From positions 186,001 to 250,000 of the IMG/VR virus record IMGVR_UViG_3300034358_000008: a stretch of DNA of 64,000 bases; one strand, given 5' to 3'. This document shows, one piece after another, positions 6,877-37,318 of this stretch. Below the pieces are notes generated by a model. It saw only the letters and a program-made list of their open reading frames with translations. It was not told the DNA's origin and searched no databases. The translations under genes were made by a program, and so were the position numbers. Within the stretch, counting starts at the first letter, position 1. Every line of letters starts with the position of its first letter.

Positions 6877-7413
6877 ATGACCCAGCTCTTAGTCGTACCA
6901 GAAGCAGTTTACGATCAGTGGAAATCTGATGGTGTACTCTTCACACGTCTTTTAGACACCAACTATATAGCTAGCGTTAGTTCGGTTAACGATCTGGCGC
7001 AAATCGACTTAGCTATGAACCAATTTCCATTCGTGTTTGGCCCCGGTACAGGCGTAAGTCTGGCTGTTAGCCCACGAGCTGGCATTGCAATTGCATCGAC
7101 CGCAGATAACCTCGAACGGTTTAAGATGCAAGATTTGCATAATGCTTTAGAGGAACGTGTCGAAACGATCACGCTCCGTTTCACTAATGAACCAAAAGTT
7201 TGTAGTGAATATTCCCTTTATCCTGTAGATGAGAATCTTTGGGTTGCGGTGCAGAAGAGTCTGCCTATCACCAATAGCGATCCTGAACGGTTTACCTTGA
7301 TCAGTAACCGTACGTTCTTCGATAGTATGATTAATGAGTTGCTGAGAACTTGTAAATTAGAGCAAGTAGCATCAACGAATCTCTTCAACTATTATCTTAT
7401 GTCCAAGGTCTAG
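6877..7413 (+). CDS. Virion structural protein (phiKZ gp119-like)
   Basis: Synteny between helicase and MCP. Confidence 0.65.
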   Translation: MTQLLVVPEAVYDQWKSDGVLFTRLLDTNYIASVSSVNDLAQIDLAMNQFPFVFGPGTGVSLAVSPRAGIAIASTADNLERFKMQDLHNALEERVETITLRFTNEPKVCSEYSLYPVDENLWVAVQKSLPITNSDPERFTLISNRTFFDSMINELLRTCKLEQVASTNLFNYYLMSKV

Positions 7414-7487
7414 TTCCGGTGAAAAATAGGCCTGGACAATAGATACTCGTTTAAAACCAAAACCCATCCTGCGTAGGAAATTATTAG

Positions 7488-9707
7488 ATGAAAACTTTGA
7501 AATCTCTTCTGAAGGCTAGCGCCACAGATAAACCAGTCTTCTCCATGGAAGCATTCGTAAGCAAGCTGAACCTCGAAAACGATCTGGCCGATGGCGTGTT
7601 TAATACCGCAGCTGGTCTGGCCGCTACCGTAGGTCTGGAAAGCTTTGGTCAAAAGGATGACGCTCAAGCTGCGTCGAACGTATTCAAGACTCTGACTCAG
7701 ATGGCTACCAAGCTGGGCTTTGAGCAGTACATCTCCGAAGACGCTCGCGTTGCAGAGAACCAACTGACTGCTGCTTTCCTGGGTACTATTGCTGCCGCTA
7801 ACCCGGATCAGTACATCAAGGCTCTGCGTGGCCTGTCGAAGGTAATCCCTTCGAACGAAGCTATCAAAACCATCGAACACAAATTCGACGGTCCTGCCGG
7901 TTCCCTGCAAGTATTTGACGCTGAAGGCGCCAAGACCATGGGTCTGGAAAACTACAACGAGAAATCGCAACGTGACTTCCGTGTTGTAACCGTTGGTTAT
8001 AACCTGGCAGCTTCCCGTCAGGATGAGTTCTCCGAGCGCATCTACCCAACTACCGTTATCAACCCTATCGAGGGTGGTGTAGTTCAGGTACTGCCGTACA
8101 TCGCTGTAATGAAAGACGTCCATCACGCTGTTAACGGTGCTCGTTGGAAGAACGAAGAAGTGAACATGGTAGAAGCATACCGTGATCCGTCGATTCTTGA
8201 CGACAACGCTACTGATCTGATCGTTGCGATCGATCCAGCTGGTACCAACCTGGACTTCTTCGTTGACCCGGCTCTGATTCCTGCTGAGACCATTGTTAAC
8301 GAACAAAACCTGTCGATCGAAACCGCTCCTCTGAAGCCTGGTATTCGTATTGACCTGATCGGTAACTCCAACGCTAACCTGCTGATCTCGGCTGGCATGC
8401 TGGAAGTATCTGATACCATCGACCCTGCTGGTCGTCTGAAGAACCTGTACGTTAAGTTCCAAGGTAAAGTTGTTAAGTTCAAAGTTGACCGCATGCCTCG
8501 CGCTGTGTTCCAACCTGACCTGATCGGCGACACCCGTGGCGCACGTATCGACTTCTGGACTGATGATCTGAGCGTAAGTTCGATCACCCGTACTATCGAC
8601 GGCGTACAAACTGCTGCAATGCAAGAACTGACCCAGCGTGAATGGGTACTGCGTCTGAGCGTTGACTTCAGCGGTAACATCAGCACCTCGAAAGGTGACT
8701 CCCGCTTCAACAACGGTACTGCCGAAATCTCGGCTATCCTGAACTCTGACCGTCGTCCAGTAGATATGAAATCTGGCGCTGGTAAAGTTCTGGTTGATTC
8801 GATCACCGATCTGGAAATCGTTGGTTTCGACCTGCTCACTCGGTTCACCAACACTAACCGCCGTCAACGTGGTCACCTGTTGCAAACCCGTGCTCTGCAA
8901 TTCCGTCACCCAATCCCGATGCACGCTCCAGTGACTCTGCCACTGAGCACCATGGAAGATGAAGGTCCAGGCGAAGTTGTTAAAGCACTGACCGTGAACA
9001 CCAACATTCGTAACAGCAACAACGCTGTTAAGACTCTGTTGAACTACCTGGCTCAACTGCGTGAACTGACTGGTAATGGTTTCAACCGTCCAGTTATCAA
9101 CGTGTACGAAGGTGCGCTGGCCGCAGTAATGCGTCCTACCTACCACTTCGAACGCATGCACTTGCCAGACATGATCGATACCCTGAAGTCGAAAGATCGT
9201 TGGGACGACGTTTGCTCCGCTATCCTGAACAAAGTTAAAGGTGCGCTGTTCCCAGCCTACCGTAACTCGAACATCGAAGCTGCTTTCCGAGTGATCTCGG
9301 GCAACCAAGATGAGCGTCCAATGTTCCTGTTCTGCTCGGACAAAGAGATCGCCAACTACCTGATGACCAAAGGTGACGACCGTACCCTGGGTGCTTACCT
9401 CGAGTACGACATCGTATCGACCAACAACGAACTGTTCGACGGTAAGCTGGTAGTAGTACCAACCCGTAAGACCCCAGTAGAGAACGACATCCTGAGCTTC
9501 GGTCAGTTCTTCTACGTGTCGACTATCATCGCCGATCTTCCGATCAGCCGTGGCGGTCACCAGGTCTCCCGTGAGATCGCAGCCATTCCTTTCAACCTGC
9601 ACATCAACAACATTCCATTCGCACTGGAATTTGAAGTAACAGGCTTCCAGGAAGTAATGGGTCACTCGCAGTGGAACAAGCCCGTCGTTGACGGCCTGAA
9701 TGCCTGA
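7488..9707 (+). CDS. Major capsid protein (phiKZ gp120-like)
   Basis: 739 aa; strong codon bias; propeptide with SME/GLE sites; YNLAASRQDEFSERIYPT and NRRQRG motifs recognised from phiKZ-like MCPs. Confidence 0.92.
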   Translation: MKTLKSLLKASATDKPVFSMEAFVSKLNLENDLADGVFNTAAGLAATVGLESFGQKDDAQAASNVFKTLTQMATKLGFEQYISEDARVAENQLTAAFLGTIAAANPDQYIKALRGLSKVIPSNEAIKTIEHKFDGPAGSLQVFDAEGAKTMGLENYNEKSQRDFRVVTVGYNLAASRQDEFSERIYPTTVINPIEGGVVQVLPYIAVMKDVHHAVNGARWKNEEVNMVEAYRDPSILDDNATDLIVAIDPAGTNLDFFVDPALIPAETIVNEQNLSIETAPLKPGIRIDLIGNSNANLLISAGMLEVSDTIDPAGRLKNLYVKFQGKVVKFKVDRMPRAVFQPDLIGDTRGARIDFWTDDLSVSSITRTIDGVQTAAMQELTQREWVLRLSVDFSGNISTSKGDSRFNNGTAEISAILNSDRRPVDMKSGAGKVLVDSITDLEIVGFDLLTRFTNTNRRQRGHLLQTRALQFRHPIPMHAPVTLPLSTMEDEGPGEVVKALTVNTNIRNSNNAVKTLLNYLAQLRELTGNGFNRPVINVYEGALAAVMRPTYHFERMHLPDMIDTLKSKDRWDDVCSAILNKVKGALFPAYRNSNIEAAFRVISGNQDERPMFLFCSDKEIANYLMTKGDDRTLGAYLEYDIVSTNNELFDGKLVVVPTRKTPVENDILSFGQFFYVSTIIADLPISRGGHQVSREIAAIPFNLHINNIPFALEFEVTGFQEVMGHSQWNKPVVDGLNA

Positions 9708-9794
9708 GACCGAAAGGGCGGTTCCCGCTACTCCGAAGACGGTACAAGTCTGAGGTTTGATGAAAGCGGGGACTCCCGCCGACTAGAGCGGTGA
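9708..9794 (+). other. Putative in-frame readthrough extension of MCP (28 aa)
   Basis: DRKGGSRYSEDGTSLRFDESGDSRRLER then TGA; no ATG/GTG/TTG start; matches the C-terminus of 35969..36508. Confidence 0.65.
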
Positions 9795-9802
9795 CACTAG
9801 GT

Positions 9803-9836
9803 TATAGAGCCCCTACCAATCGGTAGGGGTTTTATG
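9803..9836 (+). terminator. Terminator of MCP transcript
   Basis: GCCCCTACC-AATC-GGTAGGGGT then TTTATG. Confidence 0.8.
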
Positions 9837-9860
9837 ACGTCTTGAGCTTAATAGAATTTA

Positions 9861-9877
9861 TTTCAAGTTTATATCAT
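9861..9877 (+). promoter_or_regulatory. phiKZ-type early (virion RNAP) promoter
   Basis: TTTCAAGTT-TATATCAT, resembling the phiKZ early consensus TATATTAC. Confidence 0.6.
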
Positions 9878-9919
9878 GCTTGGGTAATTACAATTAATGT
9901 TATCTAAAGGATTTATCGA

Positions 9920-10390
9920 ATGAGCTTTCTTTCCCGTTACTGGAATGCTGTTGAAAGACAACATACCGAAACTGGTATGAACCATGGTGACATTCGTGTG
10001 GATGTCAAACTCTTAAAAGAAAATACTCGGGTGAGTGATATTGTAGATCCCCAACCAACCCAACCTAAACCTCAAACCAACCGTCCTATCAAGGATGGAT
10101 CTATGCCCTCTACTAAATTTGAACGGGGGTCGGCTAGGCCGTACCAACGAGTTCAAGAAATGGCAGAAGATACACGGCCAATCCGCGAAGCGAAAGCTTC
10201 ACGAAACCGCAGTGTGGAAAACGAACGATCGGGGGGATCGGGTACAAGTGGTGATCAAACGAAAACGACCGCCAGGGAAGTTAAACGTCTTAGAAATAAG
10301 GCGTTGAAGAAACTAGGGGCTGGACGCAAAGTAAATGTCCAGTTAGATAAGGTAGTCATTGATGGACAATCTTGGCATCAAACGGCCTAA
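9920..10390 (+). CDS. Hypothetical basic, low-complexity protein
   Basis: AAGGA RBS; first gene after the early promoter. Confidence 0.7.
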   Translation: MSFLSRYWNAVERQHTETGMNHGDIRVDVKLLKENTRVSDIVDPQPTQPKPQTNRPIKDGSMPSTKFERGSARPYQRVQEMAEDTRPIREAKASRNRSVENERSGGSGTSGDQTKTTAREVKRLRNKALKKLGAGRKVNVQLDKVVIDGQSWHQTA

Positions 10391-35292: not shown

Positions 35293-35512
35293 GTGTCAGG
35301 TTGATGCACCGCCTACCAAAGAAGAACTTGTAAATGCTCAAGACGTGTTCCCCACAGCTACGAATGTGTGGGAAGCAAGATTCTTGATTATGTACGACGC
35401 ATACTTAGGTCAGACAGGGAACCTGTTTAACTGTGATCTCCAGGTTGACTCAATTCGTAGTTGGGACACTCAACATCTGGAGATAAAATATGAAGCTCGA
35501 AGAGTTCCTTAG
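35120..35512 (+). CDS. Putative o-spanin (Rz1-like lipoprotein); start may be 35180
   Basis: Lipobox LTA-C after a hydrophobic stretch; Pro- and Cys-containing mature part; overlaps the i-spanin gene in another frame. Confidence 0.65.
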   Translation: MSTLRKSNLWYLLRKQAVKVMFLMGLIALVSSLTACTSTIVVPAPATHDAVPSLLLSKCQVDAPPTKEELVNAQDVFPTATNVWEARFLIMYDAYLGQTGNLFNCDLQVDSIRSWDTQHLEIKYEARRVP

Positions 35513-35885
35513 TGAGCAGGGGACCGATCCGTTGACAGATGAACTCAACGGTCGTCCATTGCGTGCGTTTATCAATGCTAACCTCAAAAGGGTTGGTAGT
35601 GAACCTATCGACGCGGATACAACGTGTGACGTTATCCTTGAACGCATTTACGGCATCGAGGATGTAGATGTACAGAATACTTTGCTTAACCGCACAGTAG
35701 CTAATCTAAAGGGTGATTCGAACTATAAGCGGTTCAGTATGTACGGGGCAATCCTGCTGACAGTAATCGTGATTGGGTTGATCGTCACTGGTGGCCATCT
35801 AAGTCCTGAAGTTATTGATGCATTGAAGTCTATCGCTTTAGGCATTATTAACCTTATCGGTCCAAATACACCGCCTACAACCTAA
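35490..35885 (+). CDS. Membrane protein, holin candidate
   Basis: GGAG RBS; C-terminal hydrophobic helices; lies in the lysis region. Confidence 0.55.
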   Translation: MKLEEFLSEQGTDPLTDELNGRPLRAFINANLKRVGSEPIDADTTCDVILERIYGIEDVDVQNTLLNRTVANLKGDSNYKRFSMYGAILLTVIVIGLIVTGGHLSPEVIDALKSIALGIINLIGPNTPPTT

Positions 35886-35887
35886 CT

Positions 35888-35918
35888 ATAGCCTCCCCTT
35901 TCTAGGGGAGGTTTTATA
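35888..35918 (+). terminator. Hairpin terminator
   Basis: GCCTCCCCT-TTCT-AGGGGAGGT then TTT. Confidence 0.7.
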
Positions 35919-35968
35919 ATGCTATGTAAGTTAAGTAGATCTTTCACACGTTTTAAAGAGGGTTTAAC

Positions 35969-36508
35969 ATGAGTGATCGTTTTCCCTACAACATGTTTTC
36001 GCGAGAAGCACTTGTAGAGCTGGTCCGGCGATCCGAGCACCGACCTGATCTGAAGGATGAATACATTACCTTTGAGGATTTGTTCTTCTCCCCATCGGTG
36101 GTTGAACCGGGGCGCACTTATGTCGAGATGGTCGATCGCGTAACGAGTCATAAAGACTGGTTCGAGTTCAGACGACTGGACTTTGCAGACCGTCGGTGTC
36201 TGGGGCCTTCGATTAGTATCAAGGTCATGGGTGATCCGACCCCCGCTAGCATTGCGGCTGAAATCAACCGCTCTCGGCTAATGAAATTAGGTCCTAGTGA
36301 TGTATCTTTCTCCGAAGAAGTGATCCCAGTAATTGGCACCACTTTTGAATATGAATTCACAGCGCTGACCGGTAGTTACGTTTACTACGGTAAGACTACG
36401 ATCCAAGTAGAGGTTATCCCAGTCTCTCAATGGACACGTTATCTCGAATCCGGGACAATTCGTTACACAGAAGAAGGTGTTACACGCGATCTAGAACATC
36501 GAGTGTAA
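35969..36508 (+). CDS. Putative virion protein with C-terminal R-Y-x-E-x-G tag
   Basis: FEFRRLDF family motif; C-terminus RYLESGTIRYTEEGVTRDLEHRV. Confidence 0.75.
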   Translation: MSDRFPYNMFSREALVELVRRSEHRPDLKDEYITFEDLFFSPSVVEPGRTYVEMVDRVTSHKDWFEFRRLDFADRRCLGPSISIKVMGDPTPASIAAEINRSRLMKLGPSDVSFSEEVIPVIGTTFEYEFTALTGSYVYYGKTTIQVEVIPVSQWTRYLESGTIRYTEEGVTRDLEHRV

Positions 36509-36523
36509 TACACTGGAGTTAAT

Positions 36524-37318
36524 ATGGCTTTGTTAAAGAATGGTTCCCGTGGGGAACAGGTTGCTGCACTACAGCGTCAACTGAAGAGTCTTGGTTACGT
36601 TCTCAAAGATGACGGTGTCTTTGGTGACACTACCGAGAGTTACGTAAAAGAAGTTCAGCGTAAATTCAAACTCAAGGATGATGGGATTGTAGGCGACAAA
36701 ACCTGGGCTGTTATCAACACCCCTAACACTACTCTGAAGTCTCTAACTGAAGAGGACTTTAAATGGGCAGCAGACTTCCTTGCGGATGACGTGCCATCAG
36801 TTAAAGCTGTACGTGAAGTAGAAGCACCTCAAGGTGGCTTCCTTCCAGATGGACGTGTAACCATTCTCTATGAACGTCATGTGATGTATCGTCAGCTTTT
36901 CGCCAACGGTATTGATCCAGACCCTATCTCAGCTAAGTTCCCTGACATCGTTAATAAGAAGACGGGCGGTTATCTGGGTAAGGCGGCTGAATACACGCGC
37001 TTGGATAAAGCCAAGCAGATTGATGATAAGTCTGCATTAGAGTCCTGCTCTTGGGGCGCATACCAGATAATGGGTTACCATTGGAAACTACTGGGGTTCA
37101 AGGACGTTTACGAACTCATCGCTAAGATGGAGTCTTCGGAACGCGGTCAACTGGAATGCTTCGTGCGCTTCATTAAGGCCAACCCTGTATTGCTGAAAGC
37201 TATCCGTCAGGATGATTGGGTTACTTTCGCCCGCTATTACAACGGCTCGAATTATCGTGCTAATAAGTACGACGAAAAGCTTGAAGCTGCATTTAAGCAA
37301 AACGGCGGCTTGAAATAA
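36524..37318 (+). CDS. Modular endolysin: peptidoglycan-binding domain + N-acetylmuramidase (DUF3380-type)
   Basis: LKNGSRG..V..LQ..L / DGVFG / DGIVG; VE..GGFLPDGR..ILYERH; SWGAYQIMGYH; FARYYNG. Confidence 0.9.
   Translation: MALLKNGSRGEQVAALQRQLKSLGYVLKDDGVFGDTTESYVKEVQRKFKLKDDGIVGDKTWAVINTPNTTLKSLTEEDFKWAADFLADDVPSVKAVREVEAPQGGFLPDGRVTILYERHVMYRQLFANGIDPDPISAKFPDIVNKKTGGYLGKAAEYTRLDKAKQIDDKSALESCSWGAYQIMGYHWKLLGFKDVYELIAKMESSERGQLECFVRFIKANPVLLKAIRQDDWVTFARYYNGSNYRANKYDEKLEAAFKQNGGLK

What the first reader, a model, noticed from the sequence alone, without database searches (positions are those of the whole stretch)
9705..9794. Hidden stop-codon readthrough extension of the major capsid protein
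Seen: MCP ends AAT GCC TGA (9705-9707). The same frame continues for 28 sense codons, DRKGGSRYSEDGTSLRFDESGDSRRLER, to a second TGA (9792-9794). There is no ATG/GTG/TTG in this stretch. The terminator starts about 9 nt after the second stop, whereas most terminators in this window sit close to the gene's stop. The peptide aligns with the C-terminus of the protein at 35969..36508: RYSEDGTSLRFDESGDSRRLER versus RYLESGT-IRYTEEGVTRDLEHR (R-Y-x-E-x-G-T..R-[FY]-x-E-x-G-x-x-R-x-L-E). Established: UGA is the leakiest bacterial stop, and other phages make minor extended capsid proteins by recoding (Qbeta A1 readthrough, T7 10B frameshift). Inference: programmed readthrough tags a minority of capsid subunits with a binding peptide. 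I know of no description of this in phiKZ-like phages.
Basis: partly seen in the sequence, partly recalled or inferred. Interest (0 to 1): 0.92.

Follow-up and report, generated by a model that had tools for sequence, protein, structure and literature searches.

The report
Leaky-stop tail on jumbo-phage capsid protein
The major capsid gene of this phiKZ-like jumbo phage, and of phiKZ, 201phi2-1, PhiPA3 and Goslar, ends in a conserved leaky TGA stop followed by a short conserved, unannotated in-frame peptide that copies the C-terminal tail of a virion filament protein, so a few capsid subunits probably carry a docking tag made by stop-codon readthrough.

Summary
MCP (7488..9704) ends in TGA (9705-9707), followed by 28 in-frame sense codons and a second TGA (9792-9794), then the terminator hairpin. 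Within the window this is not unusual (P about 0.22). The comparative evidence is strong. In 23 distinct phiKZ-like MCP loci across several genera the stop is always TGA. It is followed by 24-30 open codons encoding R..E.G..R..E.G..R.LE. Invariant residues use 2-5 synonymous codons, and the other two frames are full of stops. All 15 relatives without the peptide have TAA followed directly by the terminator, and the two traits switch together at least 2-3 times on the MCP tree. None of 116 MCP cluster representatives has the stop replaced by a sense codon. The peptide is homologous to the C-terminal tail of the phiKZ gp143 homolog (35969..36508; hhalign E 3.6e-10), a DUF7941-fold virion protein. 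In distant Goslar the MCP also ends TGA plus 28 codons, and that peptide copies the tail of Goslar gp23, with a different sequence. Best reading: programmed UGA readthrough gives a minority of MCP subunits a mimic of the DUF7941 docking tail, which recruits those filament proteins to the capsid. Translation and binding are inferred, not shown. I found no published description.

The parts
7488..9704 (+). Major capsid protein (phiKZ gp120 / 201phi2-1 gp200 homolog), 739 codons
   Evidence: ORF list. Pfam PF25620 PhiKZ_MCP, E 1.5e-218. PDB 8y6v gp120. 82-84% nucleotide identity to Viktualia and 201phi2-1.
9705..9707 (+). First stop, TGA (+4 base G): the proposed leaky readthrough site
   Evidence: TGA in 28 of 28 distinct MCP loci that have an extension and TAA in 15 of 15 that have none. 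TGA ends only 12 of 55 long ORFs in the window. The +4 base across the 23 phiKZ-like loci is A16, G6, C1, U0.
9708..9791 (+). 28-codon in-frame extension; conserved core R..E.G..R..E.G..R.LE at 9726-9788
   Evidence: There are 0 stops in frame 0 against 33 and 30 in frames +1 and +2 over 23 homologous extensions. Invariant R/E/G columns use 2-5 synonymous codons, and pN/pS is 0.45-0.56 in frame against 0.84-1.27 shifted. Unannotated in nearly all GenBank records.
9792..9794 (+). Second stop (TGA here; TAA, TAG or TGA in relatives)
9801..9838 (+). Intrinsic terminator hairpin followed by TTTTATG
   Evidence: MFE fold, z = -4.2. Conserved with compensatory pair changes in 11 phages. In relatives without the extension it sits directly after the TAA.
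35969..36508 (+). phiKZ gp143 / 201phi2-1 gp228 homolog: DUF7941-fold N-terminal domain (residues 1-150) plus C-terminal tail
   Evidence: tblastn and alignments A2/A6. AF2 model with pLDDT 86.9. The only significant Foldseek hit is a chain of the phiKZ peripheral baseplate, 9xqd, E 1.3e-6. Literature: virion protein by MS, 'lysis regulator', DUF7941.
36437..36505 (+). C-terminal tail RYLESGTIRYTEEGVTRDLEHRV, the sequence that the MCP extension copies
   Evidence: Kept in all 23+ gp143 homologs, including phages whose MCP has TAA and no extension. AF2 tail pLDDT is about 70-74, with beta-bridges every 8 residues.

Best explanation
Ribosomes translating the very abundant MCP mRNA normally stop at UGA 9705-9707. 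A small fraction decode it, most likely with host near-cognate tRNA-Trp, and add 28 residues before stopping at the second stop just ahead of the terminator. Each T=27 capsid has about 1,600 MCP copies, so a few to a few dozen would carry a C-terminal peptide built of three 8-residue repeats (R-x-x-E-x-G-x-x). This peptide copies the C-terminal tail of the gp143-family DUF7941 protein. DUF7941 proteins are predicted to chain head-to-tail, the tail or linker of one protomer docking on the N-terminal domain of the next. The extended MCP would therefore offer a docking site at a capsomer centre, where gp120 C-terminal arms meet, and recruit or seed DUF7941 protein(s) on the capsid. Shown here: conserved TGA, conserved open frame, protein-level selection, homology to the gp143 tail, the DUF7941 fold of the gp143 homolog, and a parallel co-evolved case in Goslar. 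Inferred: that readthrough occurs and at a low rate, the residue inserted, outward exposure of the tail, and binding to a DUF7941 N-terminal domain. My sub-estimates: the extension is translated as an MCP fusion, about 0.85; its role is DUF7941 docking, about 0.5.
For: (1) In 23 distinct phiKZ-like loci (phiKZ, PhiPA3, 201phi2-1, Phabio, Psa21, Noxifer, PS119XW, RVTF4, D6, Viktualia and IMG/VR contigs) the stop is always TGA, followed by 24-30 open codons with the motif. (2) Coding signature: 0, 33 and 30 stops in frames 0, +1 and +2. Invariant Arg, Glu and Gly columns use up to 5 synonymous codons, and pN/pS is lowest in frame 0. (3) Loci without the motif have TAA plus an immediate terminator. 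The two traits switch together at least 2-3 times on the MCP tree. The association is 28/0 against 0/15, Fisher 6.6e-12 ignoring phylogeny. (4) The stop is never lost: 0 of 116 MCP cluster representatives carry the motif fused. (5) There is no conserved in-frame start codon in the extension. (6) The extension is homologous to the gp143 tail (hhalign E 3.6e-10). tblastn of the phiKZ extension against 50,697 phage records hits only phiKZ-like phages, with two places per phiKZ-type record; in Noxifer and Phabio the hit lies in the gp143 homolog. (7) Goslar MCP ends TGA plus 28 codons whose core, L.DNVADGF..P, matches the tail of Goslar gp23, a DUF7941 protein next to the endolysin as gp143 is. 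The Smith-Waterman score of 55 was reached by 0 of 20,000 shuffles and is the best of all ORFs in 36 kb. PCH45 and SPLA10 have TGA plus a conserved related extension. (8) The gp143 homolog has the fold of a phiKZ peripheral-baseplate chain (9xqd, E 1.3e-6). A preprint reports head-to-tail DUF7941 filaments and about 2,140 gp23 copies per Goslar virion. (9) In the phiKZ capsid the C-terminal arms of gp120 form a six-helix bundle at each hexamer centre and contact the external protein gp244 at pentons (PMC11297242). This explains why a full fusion would be disfavoured and suggests outward exposure. (10) No tRNA lies in the window, and the tRNA mentioned for 201phi2-1 is tRNA-Leu.
Against: There is no direct evidence of the extended protein. 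The phiKZ capsid model (8y6v) ends at the annotated C-terminus, and the structural papers report no readthrough. No conserved covarying RNA structure or known stimulatory context was found beyond the absence of U at +4. Several viable lineages lack the extension yet keep the gp143 tail. phiKZ orf143 tolerates transposon insertions, so the function is accessory. The Goslar preprint anchors DUF7941 filaments at the peripheral baseplate, not the capsid. A 2026 paper assigns gp143 a cytoplasmic role as holin regulator. The AF2 confidence of the tail is only about 70. The tail-to-N-terminal-domain docking is an AlphaFold prediction by others for Goslar gp22/gp23 and phiKZ gp126-gp127; I did not test it for gp143.
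Confidence: 0.6

Rival explanations
1. Readthrough is real, but the tag is not a DUF7941 docking site. The MCP extension and the gp143 tail instead bind a common third partner (for example the holin gp142, PhuZ filaments, the nuclear shell or a host component), or self-associate as a small beta-roll, or act as a shared degradation or sorting signal.
For: The shared motif shows only that the two tails have something in common. gp143 is reported to regulate the holin. The AF2 tail shows 8-residue periodic beta-bridges that could be a self-contained mini-fold.
Against: [quoted passage not shown] In Goslar the copied segment lies exactly where the paralogs gp22, gp31, gp33 and gp34 have the linker that is predicted to dock on the next protomer.
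Confidence: 0.25
2. The 28 codons are translated as a separate small peptide, by reinitiation or a non-canonical start after termination at UGA, and not as an MCP fusion.
For: Purine-rich, Shine-Dalgarno-like GGAAAGGG follows the stop in one subclade. L036 has an ATG two codons after its TGA.
Against: Most lineages have no in-frame ATG, GTG or TTG before the motif. The peptide is always in the MCP frame and starts immediately after the stop. The stop is always the leaky TGA rather than the TAA preferred elsewhere. The SD-like run is absent from the Psa21, Noxifer, Goslar and PCH45 types.
Confidence: 0.05
3. The region is an untranslated 3'-UTR RNA element (a stability or processing signal, or part of the terminator), and the open frame is a by-product.
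For: The region folds well (z = -4.2). The last 25 nt (CGCCGACTAGAGCGGTRACACTAG) are nearly identical in the window, Viktualia and 201phi2-1 even at third positions.
Against: Most of the fold energy is the terminator. Predicted pairs inside the extension never covary. There is no Rfam match. Substitutions follow codon periodicity with synonymous Arg, Gly and Glu changes. Peptide-level similarity to gp143 tails persists where the DNA has diverged.
Confidence: 0.05
4. UGA is decoded efficiently (by a phage suppressor tRNA, selenocysteine or an alternative code), so most MCP carries the tail.
For: The whole phage genome was not scanned for tRNAs.
Against: TGA terminates 12 of 55 ORFs in the window and also ends the extension itself in 5 lineages. 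No tRNA lies in the window, and there is no SECIS-like match. The phiKZ capsid model ends at residue 747 with the C-terminal arms packed in a six-helix bundle. If full decoding were tolerated, sense-codon fusions should exist, but 0 of 116 were found.
Confidence: 0.03
5. It is a chance open frame with no function.
For: In the window alone, 28 open codons has P about 0.22.
Against: All the comparative results above count against it.
Confidence: 0.01

Closest known systems
Qbeta A1 (readthrough) protein
   Same: A UGA at the end of the coat gene is occasionally read through, giving a minor coat-extension subunit incorporated in a few copies per virion (established knowledge).
   Different: Qbeta is a small ssRNA levivirus with a 196-residue extension that is essential for infectivity. 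Here the virus is a dsDNA jumbo myovirus with an HK97-fold MCP, the tail is 24-30 residues long, it is apparently accessory (lost in some lineages), and it copies the tail of another virion protein.
T7 gene 10B and Listeria phages A118/PSA capsid extensions by programmed frameshifting
   Same: These are dsDNA tailed phages that make a minor, C-terminally extended MCP by recoding at the end of the capsid gene (established knowledge; review PMC5009743 listed).
   Different: Those use -1 or +1 frameshifts. Here the extension is in frame 0 and the other frames are closed, so the mechanism is stop readthrough.
Luteovirus/polerovirus CP-RTD readthrough domain
   Same: A leaky stop after the coat gene places a minority of extended subunits on the capsid surface, where they mediate interactions with other proteins (established knowledge).
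   Different: That is a eukaryotic plant RNA virus with a large domain and long-range RNA stimulators.
Ig-like domains appended to phage structural proteins by recoding (Fraser et al. 2006, from memory)
   Same: An accessory surface module is added to a fraction of structural subunits. The IMG/VR relative L036 has TGA plus an in-frame Big_2 domain after its MCP.
   Different: The window's extension is a short linear docking-type motif, not a folded domain.
DUF7941 head-to-tail filament proteins of chimalliviruses (Goslar gp22/gp23; phiKZ gp126, gp127, gp143)
   Same: The extension is homologous to the tail or linker that directly follows the DUF7941 N-terminal domain. The window's gp143 homolog has that fold.
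   Different: The extension has no N-terminal domain of its own. It would be a tail-only mimic grafted onto MCP. The preprint places the filament anchors at the baseplate and does not mention the capsid gene.

Membership tests
Programmed stop-codon readthrough (recoding) | A specific, usually leaky, stop codon conserved at the junction | tested here: met
   TGA in 28 of 28 distinct loci with an extension. TAA in 15 of 15 without one. The second stop varies among TAA, TAG and TGA. TGA is a minority stop in the window, 12 of 55.
Programmed stop-codon readthrough (recoding) | The downstream sequence is open in the zero frame and under protein-level purifying selection | tested here: met
   Stops in frames 0, +1 and +2 number 0, 33 and 30. 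Synonymous codon variation occurs at invariant residues. pN/pS is 0.45-0.56 in frame against 0.84-1.27 in shifted frames.
Programmed stop-codon readthrough (recoding) | No independent initiation site for the downstream segment | tested here: met
   Most lineages have no in-frame ATG, GTG or TTG before the motif. An SD-like run occurs in only one subclade.
Programmed stop-codon readthrough (recoding) | The stop is retained rather than replaced by a sense codon in relatives | tested here: met
   0 of 116 MCP cluster representatives end with the motif.
Programmed stop-codon readthrough (recoding) | A stimulatory 3' context or RNA structure | tested here: inconclusive
   The +4 base is never U (A16, G6, C1). 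Pro precedes the stop in about a third of loci. There is no covarying hairpin between the stops.
Programmed stop-codon readthrough (recoding) | The extended protein is detected in vivo at a set ratio | not testable with these tools
   This needs proteomics, western blot or ribosome profiling. Published structures and MS did not include the extension in their databases.
DUF7941 docking tail/linker | The protein whose tail is copied has the DUF7941 N-terminal fold | tested here: met
   AF2 model with pLDDT 86.9. The sole significant Foldseek hit is 9xqd, the phiKZ outer peripheral baseplate (E 1.3e-6, TM 0.61/0.71). The preprint lists gp143 as DUF7941.
DUF7941 docking tail/linker | Match to the Pfam DUF7941 model | tested here: inconclusive
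   hmmscan of the gp143 homolog against the local Pfam-A gave no DUF7941 hit at E <= 1. The model may be absent from this copy or too distant.
DUF7941 docking tail/linker | Sequence similarity of the MCP extension to the segment directly after the N-terminal domain | tested here: met
   hhalign probability 96.7%, E 3.6e-10, aligned to the last 25 residues of gp143. In Goslar the extension against the gp23 tail gave a score reached by 0 of 20,000 shuffles, and the paralogs share the linker pattern.
DUF7941 docking tail/linker | The tail binds the N-terminal domain of another protomer | not testable with these tools
   Only single-chain prediction is available here. The binding is an AlphaFold prediction plus gp22 filaments seen by negative-stain EM in the preprint.
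Selenocysteine recoding | A SECIS hairpin just 3' of the UGA | tested here: not met
   There is no Rfam match above noise and no conserved covarying hairpin after the UGA.
Alternative genetic code (TGA as sense) | TGA is not used as a terminator | tested here: not met
   12 of 55 long ORFs end in TGA. The extension itself ends in TGA in the window, 201phi2-1, L024, Psa21 and L038.
Programmed frameshift capsid extension (T7 10B type) | The extension is encoded in the -1 or +1 frame | tested here: not met
   The conserved peptide is in frame 0. Frames +1 and +2 carry 33 and 30 stops.

The most novel reading that the evidence does not exclude
Across Chimalliviridae the major capsid gene carries an ancient, unannotated UGA-readthrough module. 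Its peptide co-evolves with, and mimics, the docking tail of the abundant DUF7941 filament protein (phiKZ gp143, Goslar gp23). A set fraction of capsomer centres would then seed or anchor the 'fiber cloud' on the head rather than only on the baseplate. This would explain how thousands of copies of an unmodelled protein stay attached to the virion.
Probability: 0.45. Interest if true: 0.9.

Novelty: new variant of a known kind. Interest (0 to 1): 0.85.

Why it matters
phiKZ, 201phi2-1, PhiPA3 and Goslar are the model nucleus-forming jumbo phages. Their capsids have been solved at near-atomic resolution and their virions catalogued by MS, yet this conserved coding segment is unannotated in nearly all records and absent from the papers I could search.

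If confirmed, it would matter in four ways:
- It would be a clear case of programmed stop-codon readthrough in a dsDNA tailed phage capsid gene, with the leaky stop kept by selection.
- It would add a new minor capsid species to be looked for in existing cryo-EM maps and MS data.
- It would give a testable physical link between the capsid and the DUF7941 filament proteins. Their attachment sites and copy numbers (about 2,500 per Goslar virion) are currently unexplained.
- It would give annotators a simple rule for this family: MCP ending in TGA means an extension follows.

It also offers a natural low-copy display site on jumbo-phage capsids.

Tried and rejected
- Pfam and PDB sequence searches with the extension peptides found nothing.
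- An Rfam scan of 9600-9950 gave only sub-threshold noise.
- ARAGORN found no tRNA in the window. I did not scan a whole genome.
- RNAalifold over 11 phages showed strong covariation only in the terminator. The pairs inside the extension are invariant Gly and Ala-Arg codon bases and are therefore uninformative.
- The consensus terminator scan missed the real hairpin because its T-run is short.
- An HMM search of window ORFs for gp143 paralogs found none at sequence level.
- tblastn of the Goslar extension found only itself. The gp23 match needed direct alignment.
- I looked for the PCH45 partner tail in PCH45 1-32 kb and did not find it. It may lie elsewhere in that genome.
- A search for natural MCP-tail fusions found none. 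I read this as support for a retained stop.
It was redone with IMG/VR loci.
- A selenocysteine site, an alternative genetic code, a frameshift, an independent small ORF and a pure RNA element were each considered and rejected for the reasons given under rivals and membership tests.
Full report
**1. The observation**

The window is part of a phiKZ-like (Chimalliviridae) Pseudomonas phage. It is identical over the regions fetched (the MCP and gp143-homolog loci) to IMG/VR contig IMGVR_UViG_3300034358_000008. In the capsid gene it is about 83-84% identical at DNA level to 201phi2-1 and Viktualia.

- ORF 7488..9707 is the major capsid protein (Pfam PhiKZ_MCP, E 1.5e-218; PDB 8y6v gp120).
- It ends AAT GCC TGA at 9705-9707.
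- The same frame then runs through 28 sense codons (9708-9791) to TGA at 9792-9794.
- A strong hairpin at 9801-9838 followed by TTTTATG is the terminator. It is conserved with compensatory changes in eleven phages.

On its own it proves little. From base composition, 28 open codons has P about 0.22, and 20% of the window's long ORFs have at least that many open codons after their stop.

**2. Relatives**

I collected MCP 3' ends from GenBank phages and IMG/VR contigs. In 23 distinct phiKZ-like sequences spanning several genera (phiKZ, PhiPA3, 201phi2-1, Phabio, Psa21, Noxifer, PS119XW, RVTF4, D6, Viktualia and uncultured relatives; MCP identity down to about 48%):

- The stop is always TGA.
- It is always followed by 24-30 open in-frame codons and a second stop that varies among TAA, TAG and TGA.
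- The peptides share R-x-x-E-[DN]-G-x-x-R-x-x-E-x-G-x-x-R-x-L-E, that is, three 8-residue repeats.

The conservation is at protein level:

- The invariant Arg columns use CGC, CGT, CGA, CGG, AGG and AGA.
- The invariant Gly columns use all four codons, and Glu uses both.
- Frame 0 has no stop in any of the 23 sequences, while frames +1 and +2 have 33 and 30.
- pN/pS is 0.45-0.56 in frame against 0.84-1.27 in the shifted frames.
- Most lineages have no in-frame start codon before the motif.

**3. Stop codon and peptide go together**

Nine IMG/VR relatives of the same MCP family lack the peptide. All nine end in TAA with the terminator directly behind. On a maximum-likelihood MCP tree the state 'TGA plus motif' against 'TAA, no motif' needs three changes, and at least two are forced by well-supported branches. 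The two characters therefore switched together repeatedly.

More distant chimalliviruses behave the same way:

| Stop codon | Extension | Phages |
|---|---|---|
| TAA | none | SPN3US, RAY, RSL2, DT01, pVp-JHP1101, Eowyn, FBKp24, LAh10 |
| TGA | conserved in-frame extension | Goslar, PCH45, SPLA10 |
| TGA | short 15-codon extension containing DGF | RP12 |

Overall the count is 28/0 against 0/15 (Fisher 6.6e-12, not corrected for phylogeny). TGA ends only 12 of 55 long ORFs in the window. The base after the MCP TGA is never U. From memory, U is the strongest termination context in E. coli.

No relative has turned the stop into a sense codon. None of 116 MCP cluster representatives from a 5.8-billion-protein collection ends with the motif. 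A conserved coding tail behind a stop that is always the leakiest one and is never lost is the comparative signature of programmed readthrough.

**4. What the peptide is**

In all six frames of the window the double motif occurs twice only: in the extension, and at the C-terminus of ORF 35969..36508.

- That ORF is the homolog of phiKZ gp143 and 201phi2-1 gp228. Both are virion proteins by MS and lie between the holin and the endolysin.
- All gp143 homologs examined end in the same motif.
- Profile-profile comparison of the extensions with the gp143 family aligns the extension to the last 25 residues of gp143 (probability 96.7%, E 3.6e-10).
- tblastn of the phiKZ extension against 50,697 phage genomes finds only phiKZ-like phages, with two places in each phiKZ-type record. 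In Noxifer and Phabio the match lies in the gp143 homolog. The feature under the MCP-side match is 'none' almost everywhere, so the segment is unannotated.

**5. The link to DUF7941 filaments**

A 2026 preprint on the Goslar virion lists phiKZ gp143 with gp126 and gp127 as DUF7941 proteins. It reports three things:

- Such proteins are predicted to chain head-to-tail, the disordered linker or tail of one protomer docking on the N-terminal domain of the next.
- Purified Goslar gp22 forms filaments.
- gp23 is present at about 2,140 copies per virion but is invisible in the map.

My AF2 model of the window's gp143 homolog (pLDDT 86.9) has a folded domain at residues 1-150 and a lower-confidence tail with beta-bridges every eight residues. 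Its only significant PDB match is a chain of the phiKZ outer peripheral baseplate (9xqd, E 1.3e-6). That agrees with the DUF7941 assignment.

I then looked at Goslar itself.

- Its MCP gp41 ends in TGA, followed by 28 in-frame codons, a second stop and the terminator.
- The core of that peptide (L-D-DNVADGF-I-x-P) matches the C-terminal tail of gp23 (L-A-DNVADGF-V-x-P). The Smith-Waterman score of 55 was reached by 0 of 20,000 shuffles and is the best of all ORFs in the 36 kb examined (next best 34).
- The segment aligns with the post-domain linker of the paralogs gp22, gp31, gp33 and gp34.

Two deeply separated lineages, with MCPs about 26% identical, thus have the same arrangement with different peptide sequences. 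Each peptide matches its own genome's DUF7941 tail. That is co-evolution, and it is hard to explain unless the MCP extension is made and acts through the same interface as the tail.

**6. Mechanism proposed**

A minority of ribosomes read the UGA, most likely with tRNA-Trp. The supporting points are these:

- No tRNA lies in the window.
- The tRNA mentioned for 201phi2-1 is tRNA-Leu.
- TGA is a normal terminator elsewhere in the window.

In the phiKZ capsid the C-terminal arms of six gp120 subunits form a helix bundle at the hexamer centre. At pentons they contact the external protein gp244 (PMC11297242).

- One extended arm per capsomer could emerge there. Six probably could not, which would explain why the stop is retained.
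- The exposed tail would bind a DUF7941 N-terminal domain and so attach or seed gp143-type protein on the head.
- The role is accessory. Some lineages lost the extension while keeping the gp143 tail, and phiKZ orf143 tolerates transposon insertions.

**7. What is not shown**

- Neither the extended protein, nor the rate, nor the inserted residue, nor the binding has been observed.
- The structural and MS papers did not consider it.
- I found no stimulatory RNA structure.
- gp143 has also been described as a cytoplasmic holin regulator. The preprint anchors DUF7941 filaments at the baseplate.
- Rival readings are listed separately with the reasons for their low weight: another common partner, a separate peptide, an RNA element, and efficient recoding.

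**8. Verdict**

Capsid extension by recoding is a known kind of mechanism (Qbeta A1, T7 10B, luteovirus RTD). UGA readthrough in a jumbo dsDNA phage MCP that mimics a filament protein's docking tail is a new variant. As far as the searchable literature shows, it is undescribed.

Noticed in passing
L036:3709-4320 (IMGVR_UViG_3300043122_000192): The MCP ends TGA, followed by 203 in-frame codons containing a Big_2 Ig-like domain (Pfam E 4e-9), and then the terminator. Sister contigs (L039, L048, L051) have TAA plus the terminator. An ATG lies two codons after the TGA, so this is either a second kind of MCP readthrough extension (Ig display) or a separate small gene.
   Followed up: partly
L082:1347-1493 (Serratia phage PCH45) and L091:298-465 (Salmonella phage SPLA10): In both phages the MCP ends in TGA followed by a conserved 48-55 codon in-frame extension beginning L-x-E-I-F-K-x-E-V-L-x-G-F-A-L-P, related to the Goslar extension. 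The matching DUF7941 tail was not found in PCH45 1-32 kb.
   Followed up: partly
L090:1320-1370 (Ralstonia phage RP12): The MCP ends TGA followed by only 15 in-frame codons (RIGNTSPDGFNEFGA), which contain the DGF seen in the Goslar and PCH45 extensions. This may be a minimal version or chance.
   Followed up: no
window 9862-9880: TTTATATCATG lies between the MCP terminator and the next gene (9920..10390). It has a TATAT core invariant across five genera in alignment A1 and resembles the TATATTAC element seen after the MCP in Eowyn and FBKp24. It is probably a chimallivirus promoter for the downstream gene.
   Followed up: no
window 7410-9665 (- strand): A 751-codon antisense ORF lies opposite the MCP gene, slightly longer than the MCP ORF itself. 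It has no support as a gene, and a naive longest-ORF caller would pick it over the MCP.
   Followed up: no
L001:3462-3560 (Viktualia, PV037725.1): The GenBank record annotates a 32-aa 'hypothetical protein' across the extension, but in a different frame from the conserved peptide. This is likely a mis-call. HPP-Temi also has a small ORF annotated there.
   Followed up: partly
P0062-P0114 (MCP relatives); L037, L039, L043, L051: MCPs that lack the readthrough tail often end in low-complexity Thr/Gly/Asp/Pro-rich C-terminal stretches ending in Pro (for example ...GGDTTTP). This suggests a different, directly encoded flexible C-terminal appendage at capsomer centres.
   Followed up: no
window 35490-37318: The gp143 homolog lies between a 131-aa ORF (35490..35885) and a 264-aa ORF (36524..37318). 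By synteny with phiKZ gp142 to gp144 and 201phi2-1 gp227 to gp229 these would be the holin and the endolysin. In Goslar the DUF7941 gene gp23 likewise lies next to the endolysin gp24.
   Followed up: partly
L072 and L076 (IMGVR_UViG_3300011906_000001): One contig carries two gp143-like paralogs about 3 kb apart. One has a canonical tail and the other a degenerate tail (NEDGSFMQQEDGFYVLLESA). Its MCP (L040) has TAA and no extension.
   Followed up: no
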